Source: Oikopleura dioica
Lineage: Eukaryota > Animalia > Chordata
Direction: 5' to 3'
Assembly: GCA_907165135.1 (NCBI GenBank)
Contig: OU015566.1
Location: 806,001-870,000, forward strand
Length of the DNA stretch: 64,000 nucleotides
A program made the position numbers and the translations under genes. This document shows, piece by piece, positions 1-21,257 of this stretch. The stretch's first letter is position 1. The number at the start of each line of letters is the position of its first letter. The notes under the pieces are model-generated. The model had not been told where the DNA came from. It made no database searches and saw only the letters and a program-made list of their open reading frames with translations.

Positions 1-3000
1 TTCAGTGTTGCCTTTGACAACAATGAAGCTGAACTCAATTTCGAAGCACCGAATAAGTCTATTTCTACGTCTGTCGTTCGAAGCTCTCTAAAAGAAGACA
101 TATCGACATGGGAAAGAGTAGGACCCATCGTGGGAAAGCTTGACAAGAGTTACACTGAGCTCTGCGTTCCATTATCAGGAAAAATCTTAAATCGAATCAA
201 TTGCATGCAAAAAAACTAACGCGGGTTAACAAAGGGGTATCTAAAGTGTAATATTCCGGTGAATCGTAATGAAATGTATGGCATAGTAACAAATAGTTGG
301 ATAGCTTAGTGGTAAAGCACTCGACTCATGAGTAGGAGGTCCCAGGTTCGATCCCTGGTCCCAGATGATTTTCGAAAAATTTTTTCAGGCCAAAAAATCA
401 CTTTTTAACTGTTAGTGCCATCTTCACCGCCGTCTCAAACCGAGTCGAACGGTACAGTCGGAGTCCAAAATAAGGGACACCAAGATAAGGGACTTTTTGG
501 CTCAAAATGCCGAAAATCAGCGGCAGAAAAAAATCCAATTTAAGGGACTTTCTGAGATTAGTAAGCTTTTTCGGTTAGCTGAGAGCCAAAAATGGTATCA
601 ATTACCTTGATTTCAACCAGTTTTGCCGCAAACTGAAGTAATTTCCATTTCATTATATGGTTCCCTCTTTCAAAAATGTCATAAAAGCCACAAAAACAAT
701 GACTTCAGCTTATTTTGCCCCAAAAAATATACTTTGAAAAAATTTGGCAGCGACATATTTTTTGCTTTGATGACCCAATTTAAGGGACTTTTTTCGAAAA
801 TTTTGGAACAAAAAAAGTCCCTTATTTTGGACTCCGACTGTATATGTTTCCCTTGAAAATTCTAGAGTTTTGGGTACTTCCGGTCAAATTTACGAAATTC
901 TAGTTTTCCACTGCACATTAGGTTTTCCGCCCCCAAGTCGCAAACCTAACAAAAGAATCACACGGCTGATTTAACATATTGACCAGTCAGAGCGTGAAGG
1001 AAATACTTATGAATCAGCCCAGTCGTTATTGAACGACCCTCTTGTACAGATTATCTCGAGTCTTGGGTCTCCGGACCTGGAGAATTCTCATCAAGAAGCG
1101 TTATTCTGCCCTCTGATTGGTCAATTATGAAAATCAGCCCGGTCGTTGTTAAAAGAAACCCTTGAAGAATGACCTTTGGTTTTTGGGATCAATACCAGCT
1201 ACAGTCGGAAAATTATAAATGAAATGATAAAGAGTTAAAGATTCCTCTGAGCTTGCTCATTATTTCATCATGAGATACTAAATCTCAAAGAAGACATTGA
1301 AAGTGAAAGCGGAAAAAATCTCTTTTCTCTGGATAATATTCTCCGAATTTTCATTTTGATTTGCTGTCCGAAGTTTTTGGGCGGTCTTGGACACCGCGGA
1401 AACGAAACAAGCTCTATGCTGGACATCGAGAGCATTCTAGAGCGGTTTACAAGAAAAACTCATCTTTTGGAAGAAGGTTGGCGAATTATTGCAAAGCAGC
1501 TCTTGCCACACAAAATTCAAGCTGATTACGAAGTTGATTTTGGTTCCGTTGACCTGACTTCATTGGTTGTTTCTGAAGCTCATTTTCCCGTATCAGTAAC
1601 CGGAATGTACTATTCTGAAGATGGAATAAATACGCACCAGCTAATACTTCAACAAATCGAAGAAGGGTATTTTGTTCTTACTCTTCGAGCTGATCAAGAT
1701 CCGAAAAAGGGTTCAATTCGGATTCCGGTTCAGAACAGATTCTTTTTGAACTCCGAGGACGAGCTTGAAGACTATCCAAATCAAAATATTGATGCATTTT
1801 ATGGTGATCCTAGCGGGATAGAGCAAGAAACTTGGTACATTTTCCCAACCGCTTATTTCTTGAAAATCGATAAAATTAACAGAAAGCCGATTGAAGAAAA
1901 AATACGAAAATTCAATGACGCTTCAATTGACATGCTTTCTCGAGTTTATACCAAGCGATTTTCTGATTATACTGACGATGCGATGCCGTACTTGCTCAAT
2001 TGTCTTGAAAGAACTGAAGCATTCGACTGGAAATTTGTCAAATTCGAACGAAACTCTGATATCATGCAAGTCACGATGCCCGATGACACGAAAAAAAAAC
2101 TCAAACTCACCCCAATCATGAAAGAAATCATCAAAGATCTTGAACAGAAAAATCATCCAAAGCTTTATGGACCACCCTTGAGTCGAGAGGATTTGAAACG
2201 AGTCCAGTCGTTCTTTTTGATCGAAACTGTTGAAGATGTCGTCGAAATAGAAATGCAGAATCAGAAATGGGAAACAGCCTATATTTTCGAGCGGAACAAA
2301 ACTCTTTATCTCAAGATTCGTGGCAGAGAGAGTACGAGAGAATTTCCTCTTTCAAAAGAACAGGCCCTCGTTTTCACAGACTACAAAGAAGAATTCCAAG
2401 GAGAAGCGATCATCAGCAAGACTTTGATTGATCGAGGAGGAGAGGGTCTCGTGATGGAAATGGAAGTTGATGGAGTAACTTACGCTGCAAAAGCTCATCT
2501 CTTTGATCTTTCGATTCTAAGCCATGGGAAGAAAGTCACGGACTATATAATTGACACTGATATTTGTAAGTTCGAAATTAACGAAAAAAACATTTTTTTT
2601 GAGAAATTATTTCAAAATTTTTTAGTTGATGATCCTCGAAACGACCTTGTCCAACACAGAAACATCATCAAGCATGTTGCCAATTCACGAATTTTCCACA
2701 AAGACGACATCGAGCGAACTGACTGTTTGGGCTGGATAACATTTATGCCCAAAATGAAGCAGAATTTGTGGAGAGCGCTCGAAAATGCAGAACTTGGACC
2801 TGACGAGAGAAAGCGTATTGCCCGATCGATTTTTGAAGGAAAGCGATTTTTGCTGGAAGAGTATCGCATCGTTCAAACTGACTTGAAAGCGTCAAATATG
2901 TTTGTGACTTATGATGATTCAGCAATTAAAATTGGAGATTTCGGCCTTGTTATCGGTCAAGGCGACCAAGTTCATGGCAGTTATCAGATAAGATGTCACA

Positions 3001-5527
3001 AGAAAGAGAGTATTTGGACAAGAAAACTCGGATATCGGTAAGGATCAAAAACATAATTTCTCAAATATCCATTTGACCACCACTCGATCAAATTACCAGA
3101 CACTACGGGGCGGGGGGTGGTGTCTGGAATCGACGTAAATTTCTACGTGGACGGTGGTATGCGGTCCCCTGGGTTTTCAAACCCAGAGTCGCAAAATGCC
3201 CAGCCTGGGTTAACCAGTCCCAGATTGTCAAATTCATCAGCCTGGGTTTTTCAAAACCCAGGCTCGCCACTTCTGAGAGTCTAGATTTGGCAAACCATGC
3301 ATGGATGAAAACAGATTTTAATATGTCTACAAACAGAAATTCTGCCTATACTCTGCGATTTTGGCCCGAGGAACATTCAGCACTAAAGCTTATTGGTACT
3401 GGCAACACCGTTAATGGCCTTCTTAGTGAAGGCGCGAAAGGAGAAACAATTGACTAGCTTAAGATTGAATTTTCCTATCGAATCAGGCGCGGAGCGCACT
3501 CCAGTCGTATTTTTTTGCCTTCTCACATTTTTCTGGACTATATTTTGAGCTGACAGTACAAATTAGTACCGGTAGTTTAGTCAGGCTAAGGTAAGCTAAG
3601 GCCACATAAAACCAGATGATCAGGATTCACACAAATCTGAACATTTTCTGAACAAAACCCAGGCTCAACGATTTTGTGTCCTGGGATTAGAAAACCCAGG
3701 CTAGACACTTTTGCGACTCTGGGTTTGAAAACCCAGGTGACCGCCTACAACCTACGTGGACGGCTCCTCAGCAGCTGATTGACAGATAAGCTGAATCCGG
3801 GCTTCTGATTGGTTAAAAACTTTCCCGCAAAATTTGTCGAGATTTTTTTTCGGTTCAATACACCCGTGGGGCACCATTTTGTCAGCCCTGTTTCACTGTT
3901 AAATTCTTCTTTAGACGACCCCATGAAAAATTTCTCAACGAAGAAAGGCTTCTTTCTGGTACCCCTGGATTTACCTACAGCAAGGCATTGAACAATCAGC
4001 CAGTCGCTGTCTCTCCCTTTAGGAGGCTTCTGATCTTCCTTACCTGTGAATGGTTCACTGCTTGGAACATCAATTTTTTCACATCAATCCCTCTTGAAAC
4101 GATCAAATTCAACTTTCAACAATGTGGACTTGATTTCGAAGTTTTCCTTGCCCCGCTACGCCTTCATGAGAAAGATGCCAAAATCGACATTCTGCAAATG
4201 AAATTCGGCCAAGCGACGGATCCACACCGCTCAAGAATGCGAATGATTCACGAAGTCATGAAAATGAACCGAGTGGTTCAAATAAGCCTCGACTCTTTTG
4301 GACAACAAATTGAAATTTCCAACAGAACCGCGAAATCGGTCGAGATGCTGAAATGGAAAGAAGATCTTTCAAGACACAATTCTTATGATTTCCAAAATGT
4401 TACAAAGCATGCAATCGATCAGAAAAGTTCTGAATTGTCAGTTTCCATTTGTAAGCTTTTTCTCCTTGATTATGATTCATATGATATTTTAAGCTGTGAC
4501 GAATTTACTACGATATGCAATCAAGGAAAGACTTCGTGAAATTAACCCGAATACTGTTGATGATCAAATGAAGCCGTACACCTTCGATTTTCTTTTGAAA
4601 ACATTGATATTTCACATTTATCCGCGAAATTTTGATGGAATGGACCTGAACCCATCCCCTAGAAGAAAGTACAAAGGTGCCCCCCTTAATTTGGGATGGT
4701 GTCTGGAACCGACAAAAAATTCGACAAATTTTGCGTAGGCGGCTACTCGGCTGCTAATTGGCCGGTTTGCCAAATCCAGGATTCTGATTGGTTGAAAATT
4801 TCCACGCAAAATTTGTCGAATTTTTTTGTCGGTTCAAGACACGTCCCCCTTAATTTTTGCCAACCCTTATCCCATTATTTAGCCCAACAAAATATGAGTG
4901 TCGACAAATTGCTCCGTCGACTTGAAGAGAAAAATTTCATGTTTTGCATTCCCGTAAGGAATCAAGAAACAAATGAAATTGAATACCCGTTTTTCGAAGG
5001 ATGGAAACAGCTTCTTTTGTTGATAAAAGAGCAGGACTTCATCGCTACCTCAAAGTTCTTTTTTAACTCAGGTATCTTTATTTGAATTGCAGAAAGATTT
5101 TTTACTTATATGTTTAGTTGAATTGAATGAGAATTTCGTTTTCGACCGACCTCTGACTGTTTCTTGCTGTTACATAACACAAGATGAAAATCGAGTTCTC
5201 CACGAAAACTGGCATCAGCTTCTTCTTGATCGCGTCGACACCGTTAACAGACAGTACATTCTACAAAGCTCCCTTGTTGATGAGTCATTCCCTGAAATGA
5301 CTGCTTGTGTGAAAATCCCAATGGAGCGACCGTATTATATGCATAACGACTTTTTTGTGCGAAATCAATTTGTCCAACAAAATAATTACCAATACTTTGA
5401 CCCAGCAGCTAATGTTTTCATGAAGCTCGTCAATGTTGAAGTTGACTGTGGCATCAAGACAAATATGTGGTATCTTTTCCCAACTGCTTATTCTATTCAA
5501 ATCATTGATAAAGAATTATATGTGTAA
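1..5527 (+). CDS. Tandem papain-like / protein kinase / papain-like fusion protein, 5'-partial. Exons approx <1-178, 1252-3037, 3915-4450, 4494-~4675, ~4880-5071, 5116-5527
   Basis: Kinase motifs in ORF 1356-3041: RGGEG, AAK, QTDLKASN, DFG. Phase-2 splice 3037/3915 (cg|gtaag...ttag|a) joins RKLGYR to RPHEKF..SGTPGF..LIFLTCEWFTAW, matching GSPGF..FLFCDWKTAW in the 17570 paralogue. Papain-like blocks ELCVPLS / FPVSV / THQLIL and DQKSSELS / RPLTV / WHQLLL. The 178/1252 join needs a GA donor. Confidence 0.75.
295..366 (+). pseudogene. tRNA-Met(CAT)-like pseudogene or tRNA-derived SINE head
   Basis: A box TAGCTTAGTGGTAAAGC and B box GGTTCGATCCC. D stem (GCTT/AAGC) and T stem (CCAGG/CCTGG) pair perfectly; anticodon loop is CTCATGA. 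Anticodon and acceptor stems are largely mismatched. Confidence 0.7.
455..840. mobile_element. Tc1/mariner-type MITE
   Basis: 24-bp TIR CAGTCGGAGTCCAAAATAAGGGAC, flanked by TA at 453-454 and 841-842. Confidence 0.85.
3154..3751. mobile_element. MULE-like MITE nested in a family-A MITE
   Basis: ~58-bp imperfect TIRs (GTGGTATGCGGTCCCCTGGGTTTTCAAACCCAGAG...). 11-bp direct repeat CTACGTGGACG at 3143-3153 and 3752-3762. The flanks rejoin into a family-A copy (~3114-3866). Confidence 0.8.
4693..4847. mobile_element. 155-bp MULE-type MITE (family A, paired CCAAT boxes)
   Basis: GGG...CCC ends, long TIR (GGTGTC..GGAACCGACAAAAAATTCGACAAATTTTGCG), 9-bp TSD CCTTAATTT. Related copies at ~3114, 24873, 28797, 41003, 52808, 53615, 61710. 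Confidence 0.85.
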
Positions 5528-6042
5528 ATAAACTCAATGCATGTCGAAAATTCAACTTGCTTCGGAGACTTTTTAGGAAAATATTCTGAAAATTAATAAA
5601 AAAAAAATAAAAAAAAAGCTAGTAAAATGAAGGACAAATCAGTTTTGGAGACAAAAGCGGTCATGACGTTCTAGATCTTCTTTGGGCACTGCGTGTAGTT
5701 TTTGATTGGTCAATGGGAGCGTCCAATATTTGCGGAGAAGTGTTTCTTTGTTCCGCCCTGGGGCAGAGTGACCAGCAAAAGATTTTGATTTTTTTTTGTT
5801 TTCGGGCGATTTCGGCAATGCCCGCAGGCGCGTGAAAGAATTTTTTGCAAGAGAAAACTGAAAAAGAAAAGGAAAAGAGAAAAATTTTCATGAAGAAAGA
5901 ATAAATATTTGGAAAAATGATGACAGGAATGAGTTTAAAGAAAGCGAAAAACTGATATCAAAAATTTTACTTTGAGCTCTAGAAAATTTTTCCTGAAAAA
6001 AATTCTCTCAACTCAAAACAGATCGGACTCCAATAAAATCCC

Positions 6043-16412: not shown

Positions 16413-17569
16413 ATTCTCTTTTTGATCTTTCTTTTCTGAGTTTGATTTCAAAATGAAATATTTGCCTGCGGAAAGACTTTAACAATTGACTTTCGTGCTC
16501 ATTATAAAGCAAGATAAAACGACGAAGACAAAGGTCTCTTTGCTTAACTTTTATATTTAATTAGAAAGTAGAATCGTAGAATCTGTAAAATCCGTTCAGA
16601 TACCGATCACCGATGCCCTTTCAGTAAAATGTGTGTAAGCAGTTTCGGCAACCATTAACTTCTCTATACACGGGCGCGCGACTAAGCGCTCAAAACACGG
16701 GGTCGGGAAAACCGACCACCAAGCATTATTCAGCCCCGCGCGGCGCGCCAAATCCGGACTGTGAAAAACAGCGCCGACTATTTGGACCTCTTATTGATGT
16801 TTCCGTCGAGGTCATAAGTTCAAAATTATACTCTTAGAAAGCTTGAACACTCAGCTATTCACTCATGCTATTTTAAAGGTAAAAAATGTTCCAATTTTTC
16901 TATAATGAGCGCGAAAGACATCTGTTGTAAAGCGCCATCCCTCTTGAGAAATTTCACGAAATTTCGCAGAGTGGTTCGATTTGTTCATATGAGTGCACAT
17001 TGCAAAAATTAGGTCGAATGGATTACCACATTCGAAGTAATTGAGGTCCAAACTCGCCGTGGTCGGTTTTACCGACCACGTGTATTGAGAAGTTAAGAGC
17101 TCTTGCGCGCAAATTCTGGTAGGGAACTCATTTCTGAAGGTGGCCAACTTTCTCTACTCTCGCGCCTCCTTTGATAAAAGTCGTTTTTCTTATATACAGA
17201 ACTATTCTGCATGCAGAATTATTTCGTCGGAAAACAGCCCTTTTTCCGACGAAACTATTCTGCATTTTGCAGAACTATTCTGCATGCAGAATAGTTTCGA
17301 AGGTTTCCCATTAAGAGCGCGTTTAAGCGCGTTGTTAAAAGTAAAAAAATGCGTGAACTTTCAAAAACTATTGGGTGGATTTTGTTGCCAATTATTCCAT
17401 TTACCGATTCCGTCATAATCGTCTTCGTTCTCATAAAAAGAGCAGAATAAAGAAGAAAAGTAAATTTATCCGGAGCAGCAATGTTTCAGAGAGCATAAGC
17501 TGATTTAAAAGGATTTCGAAACAGCCAGAAAAAACTCTGCTTTAGACTAAGCAAGTTCAAACCGAGAAT

Positions 17570-20151
17570 ATGGATTCAAGTTCAATTGATAGTTCAAGTC
17601 TTTCTGAGAAAAATTTCACGGAAACGACTCAATATCCTTCTGAGCTGGAGGAAGAAAAAGTTGAGACTTGGCTGGAAAAATGTCTTCCGAAATTGAAGAG
17701 AACGACTTCTCGGACTCAAAAATGTCGACTTTTGGAATCTGTTGAGAGAGCTTATTTTGAAGATGATGACAATGCTTTTTGGTGGCAATTCGTAGAATTT
17801 AGTCACGACGATTTCAGAATTATAGATAAGGAAAGAAACGTTCTAGAAAGTATCAAGACGACCAAATTTCAAAAAATGATCCTCGAAACTGAAAAATCAC
17901 TCGTCGGCGAGAGAATCGAAAGATGGGACATCAAGGAAGAATCTGGGGGATGGAAATTGACTGATGATCTAGAAGCAAGATTGATTTCAAAAGGAGGAGA
18001 AGCACTTCTTCTCAAAGAGCATTACGATTGTTTCGAAGCTGTTGTGAGGATTCAAGTTTTTGACCCTTTTCTTTTTACAGAAAGTTTTGAAGATAAAGAC
18101 GTTTTATTTGAAATTCACGTCTCAAAAAGTATTAATTTGTTAAACTTCCGTGTTCTTATATTTTCAAAGATTTTAAGAGAGCGACTGAAGTAAAATCTTC
18201 AAACAACGATCAAATTCCGATGCATAAGAACGTTATCTCGAATTTTGTGAATATTGAAATATTTCACTCAAAGGACAAGAAAAAAGAAGATTGCTTAGGA
18301 TGGATAACAATTATGGAGAAATGCGATGCAAATTTGAGAACGTTACTGAAGGAAGAAAAGCTTGATCTTAAAGAGAGAAAGAAAATCGCCAATGAAATTT
18401 TGGATGGATTTATTTATCTGTGGCAGAAATGCGGAATCGCGCATAAAGATCGAAAGCTGGAAAACTTTGTCTTTGCTGATGGAGTCGCAAAGATAATTGA
18501 CTTTGGGCTAGTAGAGGCAAAGATTGGAAGAAATGGGTACAGAAAAATGGGATACACAAGAAGAGGGTCCAAATACAAAGATTTTAATTCTCTTGGTAAG
18601 GACTATTTCGTTATTTTTGGAAAAAAACTATTTATCTTAAATTGAAAGCTGCTGGATCACCAGGATTTACGGAACACTTTCAAATTGCAAATGGAGAAGG
18701 TTATGATGCTGATAATCATTTTTTCTTTCTATTCTGCGACTGGAAAACTGCCTGGGCCCTTTTATATCGACCAATAAATGATGATGAGACAAAAGAGATT
18801 GATCAATTAATCGAGGTATAGATATTTTGTCAAAATTATTAAATCGATCTTTGGATGAGAGGCAATTTAATGAGGCAAAACCTGTAATCTTAAAGGCTTT
18901 AAAAGCTAAGATCTTTTCATACTTGAGGAGTATTTGAATTTTAAGAACTGTGGTGCATCGGAAATGAAACACTTGGACACTCAAAGTAATGATTCTCTTC
19001 GAAATTTCTTCAACAAAGTCGAAAAACTTATCTCGATTGAAAACACCTCGTCATTTTTCTGCCTCGATGATGAAAATTTGACTGAGTCGTGCAGAATGTC
19101 AAGTTTGAGGCAAAACGCTACTAAATGCGTCCAGCAAGAAATGCAAAATTTAACTATAAATGTATTCGATCAAAAAAGCAGTCAGCTTTGTGTTCCCATT
19201 TCCGTGACGACGCTTCTTCGACACGCGATGAAGAATGACCTTCGCTACGAAGATCAGTTTAATGACTTTACTTTTGAAGCGATTCTTTCGACTTTGACAA
19301 TGATTATTTTCCCTCGAAGCATGGCTGGGCTCAATTTAAATCCGAACGAGAAAGAAAAAGAGTTTCAGAAAAATGAAGTCGAGATTCTTCTTCAACGACT
19401 TTGCCAGAACACTTATCTTATGACCTCTGGTTGGAATATTATCAGTCAAATGAGCCCAAAAGACAAAAGACCCATCAGTTCATCCTGCCATTACAATTCA
19501 GGTAAACAAATATCACAAACTTAGATATATTTGATTTTTAACCCATTGAAGTAAATCTCAACGAAAAATTCATTTTCACTCGACCATTAACTGTAACCGG
19601 CGCTTACTTATATCCTTCCGGTGAAATTCTCTTCCACCAAATGACCCTAGACAGAATTGAAAACGACGAGTACATGCTTCAGAACAACGATTTCAAGGAA
19701 CACTCTCCAGGTTAATATTTTTTTCTTCAATCTGATCAAATATTTTAAAGTTCTTCGAATTCCCCTCAAGAACCCATATTATGCCGCTTATGAGTATTTC
19801 TGTGATATCTATTTCAAAACCCAATGCAATTTATACGAAGACGATGAAATCAAGCTACAAATCGTGAATGATGAATACGGAAACATGGATGAGAATACTT
19901 GGTATCTTCTTCCTGAAGCATACACCCTCGAACTCATCCCAACTTTTCCCATTGAGGATGTTATTAAAGTCAAAAGCAATGCAAAAGATCTCGCCGATAA
20001 TTTGAAAGCGGTAAGAAATTGGATAAGAAAATATTTTCATCAAGAATCACAAACAAAGTTTCATGTACTTAGATGGGATTCGAAAATCAAGCAATTTGTG
20101 ATGCGGTCTCCTGTTGCAAGGGGGATATTGTCAACGCAGTCGACTTGCTGA
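17570..20151 (+). CDS. Protein kinase - papain-like cysteine protease fusion, multi-exon
   Basis: Kinase KGGEA, HKDRKLEN, DFG, GSPGF. Protease Q(19171)-x5-C(19189), RPLTV, H(19635)-x15-N(19683). Paralogous to the gene at 1-5527. Confidence 0.8.
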
Positions 20152-20301
20152 TGGCAGCCACGATAAATGGCGAAAATAAGAATTCGATTTTGTAAAACTT
20201 AAAAAATTCGTATCAGTTTATGCTCCTTATATGCTTGTCTCGACACCAAAAAAATCACTAATTGGAAATAACACTCAAATTTTTAATGGGCGAAAAAGTT
20301 G

Positions 20302-21257
20302 TCACTGTTCAATTTCAGAAATTAGGTTGTCAAGGCCGGTTCTCCACGAATCATCTTTTTCTTCTTCCGATTCGAACTTTTTTGATTTGGCAAAGTCAAT
20401 AAGCTTGAGCCTCAGGGTTTGAGAATCAGCAATGAAAAGTAAGCTGCAACCAATAAGCTAAAAATTCCAGTCAAAATTTTAAATTCTATATTCTTTTTCA
20501 CCTGGTGATTTTTGAGATATGAAGAATCTGTAACTGCTTGTCTCAAATTTTTGAGCTTTTCAAGAACCTCGCTTTTTTCCAGCTTGTTTCCATCGACGAA
20601 TTTTCCAAAATTTTCAAGCGCCGAATCTTTCGACATTCGCTGAAGCTCAATTTTCTCCGGTTTCTGAAAGGTTGATTCGACGTCTTTTGAAAAAGAAATT
20701 CCCTCGATTCTGAAGCCGTACATCGATGTTGTTGACAGATCATCGCGGAATTGAAGGTAGCGGGATTTTGTCACAGTGCCTGAGGAGAGCTCTTCGGGAG
20801 TGAGGGAGGTAGGGTCGAGTTTTTGCATTTTGGAAAAGAGATCTGCTCGCTCGGCGTTGTTTTTTGGATCATGGATGAAGGTCTTCTTCCCGAGCTAAAA
20901 AAATGATGACTTCATTTCAATCAGGGTCATCAAATACAGTAAAAAATTATTCTTTTGATCTACCTTAATGTCCATTACAGAAGGAGATTGGCAATCCTCC
21001 GTGAGATTTTCTAGCTCCAGATACTTCGATCCCGAAATTTCCCTTATTCCGTAAAACTCCGCTGTGTAAGGTCGAAGAGGATCATCTGACGGCAAATTTG
21101 ACAAAAACTCTGGCTCGTTTGAGTTTTCTTCGTGAAAGATCTGAATTGTCAAGAATTCGTTTCGATCAAACTTTACCTTCAAAAGATGGCCATTTTTTGC
21201 TTTCAAAATTCCTCCAGAGTGACCAGCAGCTCCGGCAAAGCTTTCAAGATCGCTCAT
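20302..21257 (-). CDS. ITPK: Inositol-trisphosphate 3-kinase family, catalytic domain only
   Basis: AGHSGG..LK, PSVMDIKLG, DP..TPEE..VTKSRYLQFRD..STTSMYGFRIEG, GCSLL, IDFA. Confidence 0.85.

What the first reader, a model, noticed from the sequence alone, without database searches (positions are those of the whole stretch)
17570..20151. Kinase fused to a papain-like protease with an intact catalytic set
Seen: downstream of the kinase, DQKSSQLCVPIS places Gln and Cys as Q-x5-C; RPLTV follows; FHQMTL...YMLQN gives H-x15-N. Established: papain (C1A) has Q19-x5-C25, a QPVSV strand and H159-N175 at the same 16-residue spacing; the paralogue even reads FPVSV. The kinase has Arg where the VAIK Lys is expected (AVVRIQ) and HKDRK for HRDLK, so it may be a pseudokinase. 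Inference: a cytosolic (no signal peptide) kinase-protease signalling or defence family. I do not recognise this architecture from characterised animal proteins.
Basis: partly seen in the sequence, partly recalled or inferred. Interest (0 to 1): 0.8.

Follow-up and report, generated by a model that had tools for sequence, protein, structure and literature searches.

The report
Kinase, papain-fold protease, UBA fusion gene
This is an apparently intact seven-exon gene of an Oikopleura-type tunicate that joins an unusual protein kinase, a very divergent papain-fold cysteine protease with all four catalytic residues, and a ubiquitin-binding-type (UBA) tail in one cytosolic protein; it belongs to a large, unstudied gene family whose function nobody has tested.

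Summary
The gene has seven exons with six GT..AG introns and 749 codons (17570-20195, + strand). The true last exon is UBA-like.

Exon 2 matches Pfam Pkinase (1.2e-11). The strand-3 lysine is Arg in 8 of 9 relatives, while the catalytic-loop Asp and Asn and the DFG Asp are kept.

The C-terminal domain matches no Pfam peptidase family and no PDB sequence. A confident AlphaFold model of a 59-62% identical relative (pLDDT 86.6) matches only papain-clan cysteine peptidases among its top 50 structures, with best Z 10.3. Across relatives, Gln is kept in 49/50, Cys in 49/50, His in 39/43 and Asn in 34/41.

So the papain-like fold is supported, but membership of papain family C1A is not. This is a new family in that clan.

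All named relatives are uncharacterised Oikopleura dioica proteins. The rest are unlabelled marine contigs. I found no paper on the family.

No RNA run listed covers this copy. Cys-His distance could not be measured.

The scan has noted this family many times elsewhere in this genome.

The parts
17570..18128 (+). Exon 1: start codon, hydrophilic N-terminus, conserved alpha/beta N-terminal region, kinase glycine-rich loop (GGEALL 17993-18010) and strand 3 (AVVRIQ 18038-18055)
   Evidence: Open frame and GT donor at 18129. 40-47% identical to the N-termini of P0004, P0082, P0097 and P0098. The equivalent part of P0097 is modelled at pLDDT 80-90.
18047..18049 (+). Arg codon at the kinase strand-3 (VAIK) lysine position
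   Evidence: Column count in alignment A6: Arg in 8 of 9 sequences, Lys only in the window's unit B.
18170..18595 (+). Exon 2: kinase helix C to activation segment, with catalytic loop HKDRKLEN (18442-18465) and DFG (18499-18507)
   Evidence: Pfam Pkinase E 1.2e-11, 45 bits against a cutoff of 31.7. PDB sequence hits are CDK9, TTK, KSR and JNK. Catalytic-loop Asp 11/11, Asn 14/14 and DFG Asp 13/13.
18649..18815 (+). Exon 3: kinase P+1 loop (GSPGF) and helix F-like FCDWKTAW motif
   Evidence: Colinear with homologues in alignments A5 and A6. Short reads from related transcripts match here.
18946..19501 (+). Exon 4: conserved linker (FCLDDENLT) and the helical lobe of the protease, with Gln 19171-19173, Cys 19189-19191, FPRSMAGLNLNP 19309-19344 and SGW 19426-19434
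   Evidence: The phmmer search of 1.84 billion representatives gave 67 relatives. The acceptor at 18946 was chosen by colinearity with homologues; 18928 is an in-frame alternative. In the model of relative P0085 the Cys is the first residue of a long helix.
19552..19710 (+). Exon 5: beta-sheet lobe with RPLTVTG (19581-19601), His 19635-19637 and Asn 19683-19685
   Evidence: 51-73% identical to the homologues matched. In the P0085 model His lies in strand 161-171 and Asn follows strand 174-178.
19751..20010 (+). Exon 6: rest of the beta-sheet lobe (WYLLPEAY 19900-19923) and a tail (AKDLADNLKA 19981-20010) that reads like UBA helix 1
   Evidence: 25-59% identical to homologues. The strong donor gcg|GTAAGA is at 20011.
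20073..20195 (+). Exon 7: UBA-like domain (MGF loop 20073-20081, last helix IVNAVDLLM 20127-20153) and TAA stop at 20193-20195
   Evidence: Pfam UBA E 0.0025, 18.0 bits, below the 22.4 cutoff, covering profile positions 12-37 of 37. In the protein-atlas feature search 16 of 20 named hits are UBA clusters at 0.90-0.93, sharing 180-201 features. No family member retrieved has this exon.

Best explanation
The locus is one real seven-exon gene (17570-20195, + strand, 749 codons). It encodes a cytosolic four-part protein: a conserved N-terminal alpha/beta region; a divergent eukaryotic protein-kinase domain; a cysteine peptidase domain of the papain fold (clan CA) that forms its own sequence family; and, in this copy, a C-terminal UBA domain. 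Shown: the kinase keeps its catalytic-loop Asp and Asn and its DFG Asp, but has Arg for the ATP-anchoring strand-3 Lys. The peptidase domain keeps the oxyanion-hole Gln, the nucleophile Cys at a helix N-terminus, the His on a beta strand, and the orienting Asn. Inferred: the protease domain is an active thiol (iso)peptidase. The kinase-like domain acts as a nucleotide-binding regulator or scaffold with weak or no phosphotransfer (a KSR-type signature, from memory). The UBA tail directs this copy to ubiquitinated proteins or ubiquitin chains. The gene is one intact member of a large, fast-evolving family seen so far only in Oikopleura dioica and in unlabelled marine contigs.
For: Gene model: six GT..AG introns of 40-130 nt, phases consistent, no in-frame stop, and every junction colinear with homologues. 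Kinase: Pfam Pkinase 1.2e-11. A model of relative P0097 residues 1-450 matches only protein kinases, with Foldseek E down to 1e-7 and probability 1.0. Protease: the AlphaFold model of relative P0085 (59%, 62% and 42% identical to exons 4, 5 and 6) has pLDDT 86.6 and pTM 0.83. All 50 listed structural matches are clan-CA-type cysteine peptidases or close papain-fold relatives. The best are xylellain (Z 10.3, 160 residues aligned), Der f 1 (10.1), cathepsin B (9.8) and the PCAT1 C39 domain (9.3). Foldseek against the PDB and the ESM Atlas search point to the same clan. Catalytic columns: Gln 49/50, Cys 49/50, His 39/43, Asn 34/41. UBA. Fusion conserved: a divergent subfamily also sits directly after a Pkinase ORF on contigs L001, L002 and L004. 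Family: 67 representatives at 50% identity and 89 clusters at 90% identity, with every named one an O. dioica protein.
Against: None of the four RNA runs laid covers this copy; only short conserved stretches from related transcripts matched, so expression and the introns are unconfirmed. The fold was predicted for a paralogue, not for this protein, because the exons were not joined. No coordinates are returned, so Cys-His proximity is inferred only from secondary-structure positions. Foldseek E-values against the PDB are weak (0.024 or worse), and the tool's own note says Z under 8 can be a common arrangement; the top 23 rows exceed 8. The UBA hit is below Pfam's cutoff, and no retrieved relative has this exon. 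Lys-to-Arg at strand 3 usually abolishes kinase activity, so the kinase's role is open. Function is wholly untested.
Confidence: 0.6

Rival explanations
1. The protease domain is a true but extremely diverged descendant of the animal cathepsin/papain family C1A that was recruited into the cytosol, rather than a separate family of the clan.
For: C1 structures top the structural list (xylellain, Der f 1, calotropain, Der p 1, cathepsin B; Z 9.8-10.3). The Q-x5-C and His-to-Asn spacings equal papain's (established papain numbering Q19, C25, H159, N175). The divergent subfamily reads PHAVTLY..QNEFVIKNSYF..KEIRI, which resembles the C1 motifs HAV...IKNSWG...GYIRI as I recall them.
Against: No Peptidase_C1 or inhibitor I29 hit in this gene or in 73 relatives at E up to 10. 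Profiles A3 and A4 find no C1 chain in the PDB at E up to 10. C39 domains score nearly as high (Z 8.9-9.3). There is no signal peptide or pro-region. Sequence identity to C1 structures is 8-15%.
Confidence: 0.25
2. This copy is an unexpressed or decaying paralogue, or the protease domain is a non-catalytic scaffold, so the intact catalytic set has no present function.
For: None of the four RNA runs covers it. The family contains degenerate copies. In this same window unit A has Lys for the Gln and Leu for the Asn, and unit B has Ser for the Cys and Ser for the Asn. P0004 has Ser for Cys and P0071 has Phe for His.
Against: 749 codons run without a stop across seven exons with canonical splice sites. 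All four catalytic residues and the family's other near-invariant positions (PRS, R101, GW) are kept. The RNA runs may come from a diverged strain: most of the few reads that matched were only 90-95% alike and matched only in part.
Confidence: 0.15
3. The papain-fold domain is not a peptidase but another thiol enzyme of the same fold, such as an acyltransferase, a transglutaminase-like enzyme or a lyase.
For: The papain fold hosts such activities. The match list includes a lyase (22oc, Z 8.4), a pseudomurein endoisopeptidase (8z4h, Z 8.7) and a CDI toxin (8ssm, Z 7.7).
Against: The Gln-Cys-His-Asn order and spacing are those of peptidases, and nearly all the 50 listed matches are peptidases.
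Confidence: 0.1

Closest known systems
Papain family C1 cysteine peptidases (papain, cathepsin B, Der f 1, xylellain)
   Same: Same two-lobe fold. Cys sits at the N-terminus of the central helix, with His and Asn on a beta hairpin. The Q-x5-C and His-to-Asn spacings are identical. These are the best structural matches (Z 9.8-10.3, 150-160 residues aligned).
   Different: No detectable sequence-family membership (no PF00112 hit; 8-15% identity). No signal peptide or pro-region. The protein is cytosolic, fused after a kinase, and carries its own motifs (YPRSxAGLNLNP, SGWxII, WYLLPxAY).
C39 double-glycine peptidase domains of ABC exporters (PCAT1, ComA)
   Same: Compact papain-fold domain with Gln/Cys/His/Asn-or-Asp. 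Z 8.9-9.3 at the lowest rmsd in the list (3.0-3.1 Å). Most ESM Atlas matches are C39-like.
   Different: C39 domains are bacterial, about 130-150 residues, and attached to transporters. This domain is about 230-330 residues in an animal cytosolic protein. There is no Pfam C39 hit.
Papain-fold deubiquitinases and ubiquitin-like proteases (UfSP, ATG4, ZUFSP, coronavirus PLpro)
   Same: Cytosolic papain-fold thiol proteases. Some carry ubiquitin-binding modules, as this gene carries a UBA-like tail.
   Different: Structural scores are lower (Z 6.0-7.8). There is no sequence match, and activity on ubiquitin is untested.
KSR-type pseudokinases (from memory: Arg replaces the strand-3 Lys and the catalytic loop reads HKD)
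   Same: Arg sits at the VAIK lysine position and the loop reads HKDxK, with DFG kept. KSR1 and KSR2 are among the PDB sequence hits of exon 2 (E 5e-6 to 4e-5).
   Different: CDK9 and TTK score as well or better, so no orthology is implied. The C-lobe after helix F is poorly modelled (pLDDT under 50). No Raf/MEK context is known.

Membership tests
Peptidase family C1 (papain, subfamily C1A) | Significant match to the family profile (Pfam PF00112 Peptidase_C1) | tested here: not met
   No hit for exons 4-6 at E up to 1, for 8 full relatives, or for 73 relatives scanned singly at E up to 10. Profiles A3 and A4 find no C1 chain in the PDB.
Peptidase family C1 (papain, subfamily C1A) | Catalytic Gln, Cys, His and Asn in that order, with Q-x5-C and His-Asn 16 residues apart | tested here: met
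   Coordinates are given. Conservation is 49/50, 49/50, 39/43 and 34/41.
Peptidase family C1 (papain, subfamily C1A) | Secretory or lysosomal zymogen: signal peptide and I29-type pro-region | tested here: not met
   The N-terminus is hydrophilic and the protease follows a kinase. There is no I29 hit. No dedicated signal-peptide predictor was available.
Clan CA (papain-fold cysteine peptidases) | Two-lobe fold with Cys at the N-terminus of a helix, followed in sequence by His and Asn/Asp on beta strands | tested here: met
   In the model of relative P0085 (pLDDT 86.6), Cys32 begins helix 32-48, His163 lies in strand 161-171 and Asn179 follows strand 174-178. The top 50 structural matches are all of this clan type. 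This was tested on a paralogue, not on this protein.
Clan CA (papain-fold cysteine peptidases) | Cys and His side chains within bonding distance in three dimensions | not testable with these tools
   The structure tool returns no coordinates, and the search tools give no residue-level alignments.
Eukaryotic protein kinase (ePK) | Match to the Pkinase profile and a kinase fold | tested here: met
   Pfam PF00069 E 1.2e-11 on exon 2. The model of relative P0097 matches only kinases.
Eukaryotic protein kinase (ePK) | Full catalytic set: strand-3 Lys, catalytic-loop Asp and Asn, DFG Asp | tested here: not met
   The Lys is replaced by Arg, here and in 8 of 9 relatives. The Asp, Asn and DFG Asp are present.
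UBA domain (PF00627) | Profile match above the gathering score | tested here: inconclusive
   Exon 7 alone scores 18.0 bits against a cutoff of 22.4, E 0.0025, covering profile positions 12-37. Positions 1-11 would lie in exon 6, which was not joined. Atlas feature search: 16 of 20 named hits are UBA clusters at 0.90-0.93. No PDB sequence hit.

The most novel reading that the evidence does not exclude
The family is an appendicularian invention: a single-chain switch in which a nucleotide-sensing kinase-like domain gates a papain-fold (iso)peptidase. In this UBA-bearing copy the switch would be aimed at ubiquitin conjugates. It could serve as a fast-evolving innate-immune, cell-death or genetic-conflict module in an animal lineage. 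The tandem in-frame units elsewhere in the window raise the further possibility that the protease cuts its own polyprotein.
Probability: 0.15. Interest if true: 0.8.

Novelty: new variant of a known kind. Interest (0 to 1): 0.6.

Why it matters
Kinase, papain-fold peptidase and UBA are each familiar. I found no described protein, Pfam family or paper that joins them, and the peptidase domain has no sequence family of its own yet. The family is large, chordate-encoded, apparently lineage-restricted, and mixes intact with degenerate copies. That pattern is typical of conflict or immune genes. It offers a compact system for asking how a kinase-like domain can control a protease, and it would add a new family to clan CA. 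This copy is a good candidate for expression because all catalytic residues are intact and it alone among the retrieved members carries a UBA-like tail.

Tried and rejected
- Sequence searches of the protease part found nothing usable. These were Pfam, NCBIfam, PDB by phmmer and by two family profiles, and atlas features for exon 4 (best 0.82, below the usable level).
- Foldseek against the PDB gave only weak rows (E 0.024 or worse). The non-Foldseek structural search was needed.
- RNA evidence failed. No run holds the stretch. Laying four RNA runs gave only partial matches at conserved motifs, from related transcripts. One of these reads NQKWSN before LCVPIS, so a relative with the Cys is expressed.
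- The one joint reported (18566 to 18720, GT..AT, 3-4 reads, short side 22 nt) comes from partly matching reads, and I reject it as an intron of this gene.
- The 18928 acceptor for exon 4 is rejected in favour of 18946, on colinearity with homologues.
- P0043 (1397 aa, 14 stretches) is a low-complexity repeat protein and a spurious hit.
- The hhalign comparison of A3 with A4 is partly circular, because A3 already contains four subfamily-2 members. I use it only to show that the catalytic columns align.
- I checked whether the gene sits inside a transposon. No repeats flank it; small inverted-repeat elements lie only upstream.
- Three literature searches found no paper on this family or architecture.

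Full report
**Observation.**
Reading 17000-20700 and translating all frames shows an open reading frame that starts at 17570. It continues through seven segments that switch frame at short GT..AG introns.

- The exons are 17570-18128, 18170-18595, 18649-18815, 18946-19501, 19552-19710, 19751-20010 and 20073-20195.
- The introns are 41, 53, 130, 50, 40 and 62 nt. The total is 2247 coding bases, or 749 codons, ending in TAA.
- Every junction gives a protein colinear with homologues. That comparison is also why I prefer the 18946 acceptor over the in-frame 18928 for exon 4.
Splicing at gcg|GTAAGA (20011) to TTAG|atg (20073) gives a 40-residue last exon instead.

**Kinase.**
- Exon 2 matches Pfam Pkinase at E 1.2e-11. 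Its PDB sequence hits are ordinary kinases: CDK9, TTK, KSR and JNK.
- An AlphaFold model of relative P0097 residues 1-450 has mean pLDDT 71.8, about 80-90 up to the DFG region and under 50 after about residue 400.
- That model matches only protein kinases in the PDB, with Foldseek E down to 1e-7.
- In the family alignment the strand-3 lysine position is Arg in 8 of 9 sequences. The only Lys is in the window's own unit B.
- The catalytic-loop Asp (11/11), Asn (14/14) and DFG Asp (13/13) are invariant.
- As I recall, this is the signature of KSR-type pseudokinases, which still bind ATP. I therefore treat the domain as a probable regulator rather than a proven dead kinase.
- A divergent subfamily on a marine contig (L001) has a more canonical catalytic loop (HLDIKPAN) and the same family-specific FCDW.TAW motif.

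**Protease domain.**
- Exons 4-6 hit no Pfam, NCBIfam or PDB sequence.
- A phmmer search of 1.84 billion representatives with exon 4 gave 67 relatives. A profile word search gave 89 clusters.
- Every named relative is an uncharacterised Oikopleura dioica protein, for example CBY13560.1, CBY31701.1, CBY31442.1 and CAG5107870.1. The rest are unlabelled ENA or JGI contigs.
- I folded P0085, a 253-residue relative that is 59%, 62% and 42% identical to exons 4, 5 and 6, using a 60-sequence alignment. The model has pLDDT 86.6 and pTM 0.83.
- Foldseek against the PDB gave only weak rows, though many were papain-clan proteins.
- The exhaustive structural search gave 64 chains at Z 5 or more and 23 at Z 8 or more. 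The top 50 are all papain-fold thiol enzymes.
  - C1: xylellain 10.3, Der f 1 10.1, cathepsin B 9.8.
  - C39: PCAT1 9.3.
  - Further down: staphopain, UfSP, ATG4, ZUFSP, streptopain and coronavirus PLpro.
- The ESM Atlas search agrees, with C1, C39 and C70 clusters at TM 0.44-0.49.
- In the model the Cys is the first residue of helix 32-48, the His lies in strand 161-171, and the Asn follows the next strand (174-178). This is the papain layout.
- Column counts are Gln 49/50, Cys 49/50, His 39/43 and Asn 34/41. PRS, Arg101 and Gly-Trp112/113 are also near-invariant.
- The fold claim is therefore supported. The Cys is conserved across paralogues, with a few Ser exceptions.
- Membership of family C1A fails on sequence. 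No Peptidase_C1 hit appears in this gene or in 73 relatives, even at E up to 10, and C39 scores nearly as well structurally.
- The divergent subfamily (alignment A4) reads PHAVTLY..QNEFVIKNSYF, which recalls C1 motifs. Descent from C1 therefore stays open as a rival.

**UBA tail.**
- Exon 7 alone hits Pfam UBA at E 0.0025 (18.0 bits, cutoff 22.4), over profile positions 12-37 of 37.
- The missing first helix would be the exon-6 tail AKDLADNLKA.
- The protein-atlas feature search puts exon 7 in UBA clusters: 16 of 20 named hits at 0.90-0.93, sharing 180-201 features, with recognition 2828.
- None of the retrieved relatives has this exon, so it is a peculiarity of this copy or of a few copies.
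I did not test that note.

**Fusion and family context.**
- The kinase and protease parts occur together in single predicted proteins (P0084, P0077, P0004).
- On metagenome contigs a Pkinase ORF lies directly upstream of the protease ORF (L001, L002, L004).
- One 449-residue ORF (P0059/P0068) runs from a kinase C-lobe through a protease into the N-terminal region of a next unit. Units A and B at 1-5530 of this window do the same.
- Those two units are degenerate. Unit A has Lys for the Gln and Leu for the Asn. Unit B has Ser for the Cys and Ser for the Asn but keeps the kinase Lys.
- The gene studied here keeps all four protease residues.

**Expression.**
No listed run holds this stretch. Four RNA runs of the same species label gave only partial matches at conserved motifs, so transcription and splicing of this copy are unconfirmed. 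One related transcript reads NQKWSN-LCVPIS, which shows that a relative with the Cys is expressed.

- So the fold and the full UBA score were not obtained for this protein itself.
- No coordinates are returned by the structure tool, so Cys-His distance was not measured.

**Verdict.**
- The papain-like reading is right at the level of fold and catalytic set, but not at the level of family C1A.
- The architecture (kinase-like domain, new clan-CA peptidase family, UBA) is undescribed as far as three literature searches and the family libraries show.
- The scan has already met this family many times in this genome. Those notes agree with mine, but they are not independent evidence.

Noticed in passing
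window 1-5530 (+): Two further kinase-protease units lie in tandem, apparently in one reading frame. Unit A's protease end (WYIFPTAY, about 1833) runs straight into unit B's N-terminal region. Unit A has Lys for the catalytic Gln and Leu for the Asn. Unit B has Ser for the Cys (DQKSSELSVSI, about 4417) and Ser for the Asn, but keeps the kinase strand-3 Lys (TYAAKAH). A long interruption (about 170-1330) splits unit A's protease. An environmental ORF (P0059/P0068) shows the same unit-to-unit read-through.
   Followed up: partly
L001 333-1872; L002; L004 156-1827: A divergent subfamily (P0066, P0086, P0127, P0142) occurs on unlabelled marine contigs. Its kinase loop is more canonical (HLDIKPAN) and its protease reads PHAVTLY..QNEFVIKNSYF, closer to papain-family motifs. 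The whole protease domain is a single ORF there. The source organism is unknown.
   Followed up: partly
window 16689-17089 and 17197-17299: Small inverted-repeat elements lie just upstream of the gene: a 31-nt terminal inverted repeat pair 339 nt apart, and a palindromic CAGAACTATTCTGCATGCAGAAT repeat pair. They look like MITEs. They do not flank the gene.
   Followed up: no
window 18289-18323, 18714-18746, 19186-19210: RNA reads from three bulk runs match only these roughly 30-nt conserved motif stretches (GWITIMEKC, FLFCDWKTAW, LCVPISV) and then diverge. Related family members are therefore transcribed even though this copy was not seen.
   Followed up: partly
window 20412-21257 (-): Two minus-strand ORFs (138 and 120 aa) lie close behind the gene's stop and look like exons of a convergent neighbouring gene. 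They were not identified.
   Followed up: no
P0097 model residues 310-450, equivalent to window exon 3 end to exon 4 start (about 18760-19165): After the helix-F-like FCDW.TAW motif, the region where kinase helices G-I would lie is modelled with low confidence (pLDDT under 50). Yet it carries a strongly conserved FCLDDPNLTKS.QMS.LKQ stretch. It may be a reduced C-lobe, a linker, or a regulatory or cleavage segment.
   Followed up: no
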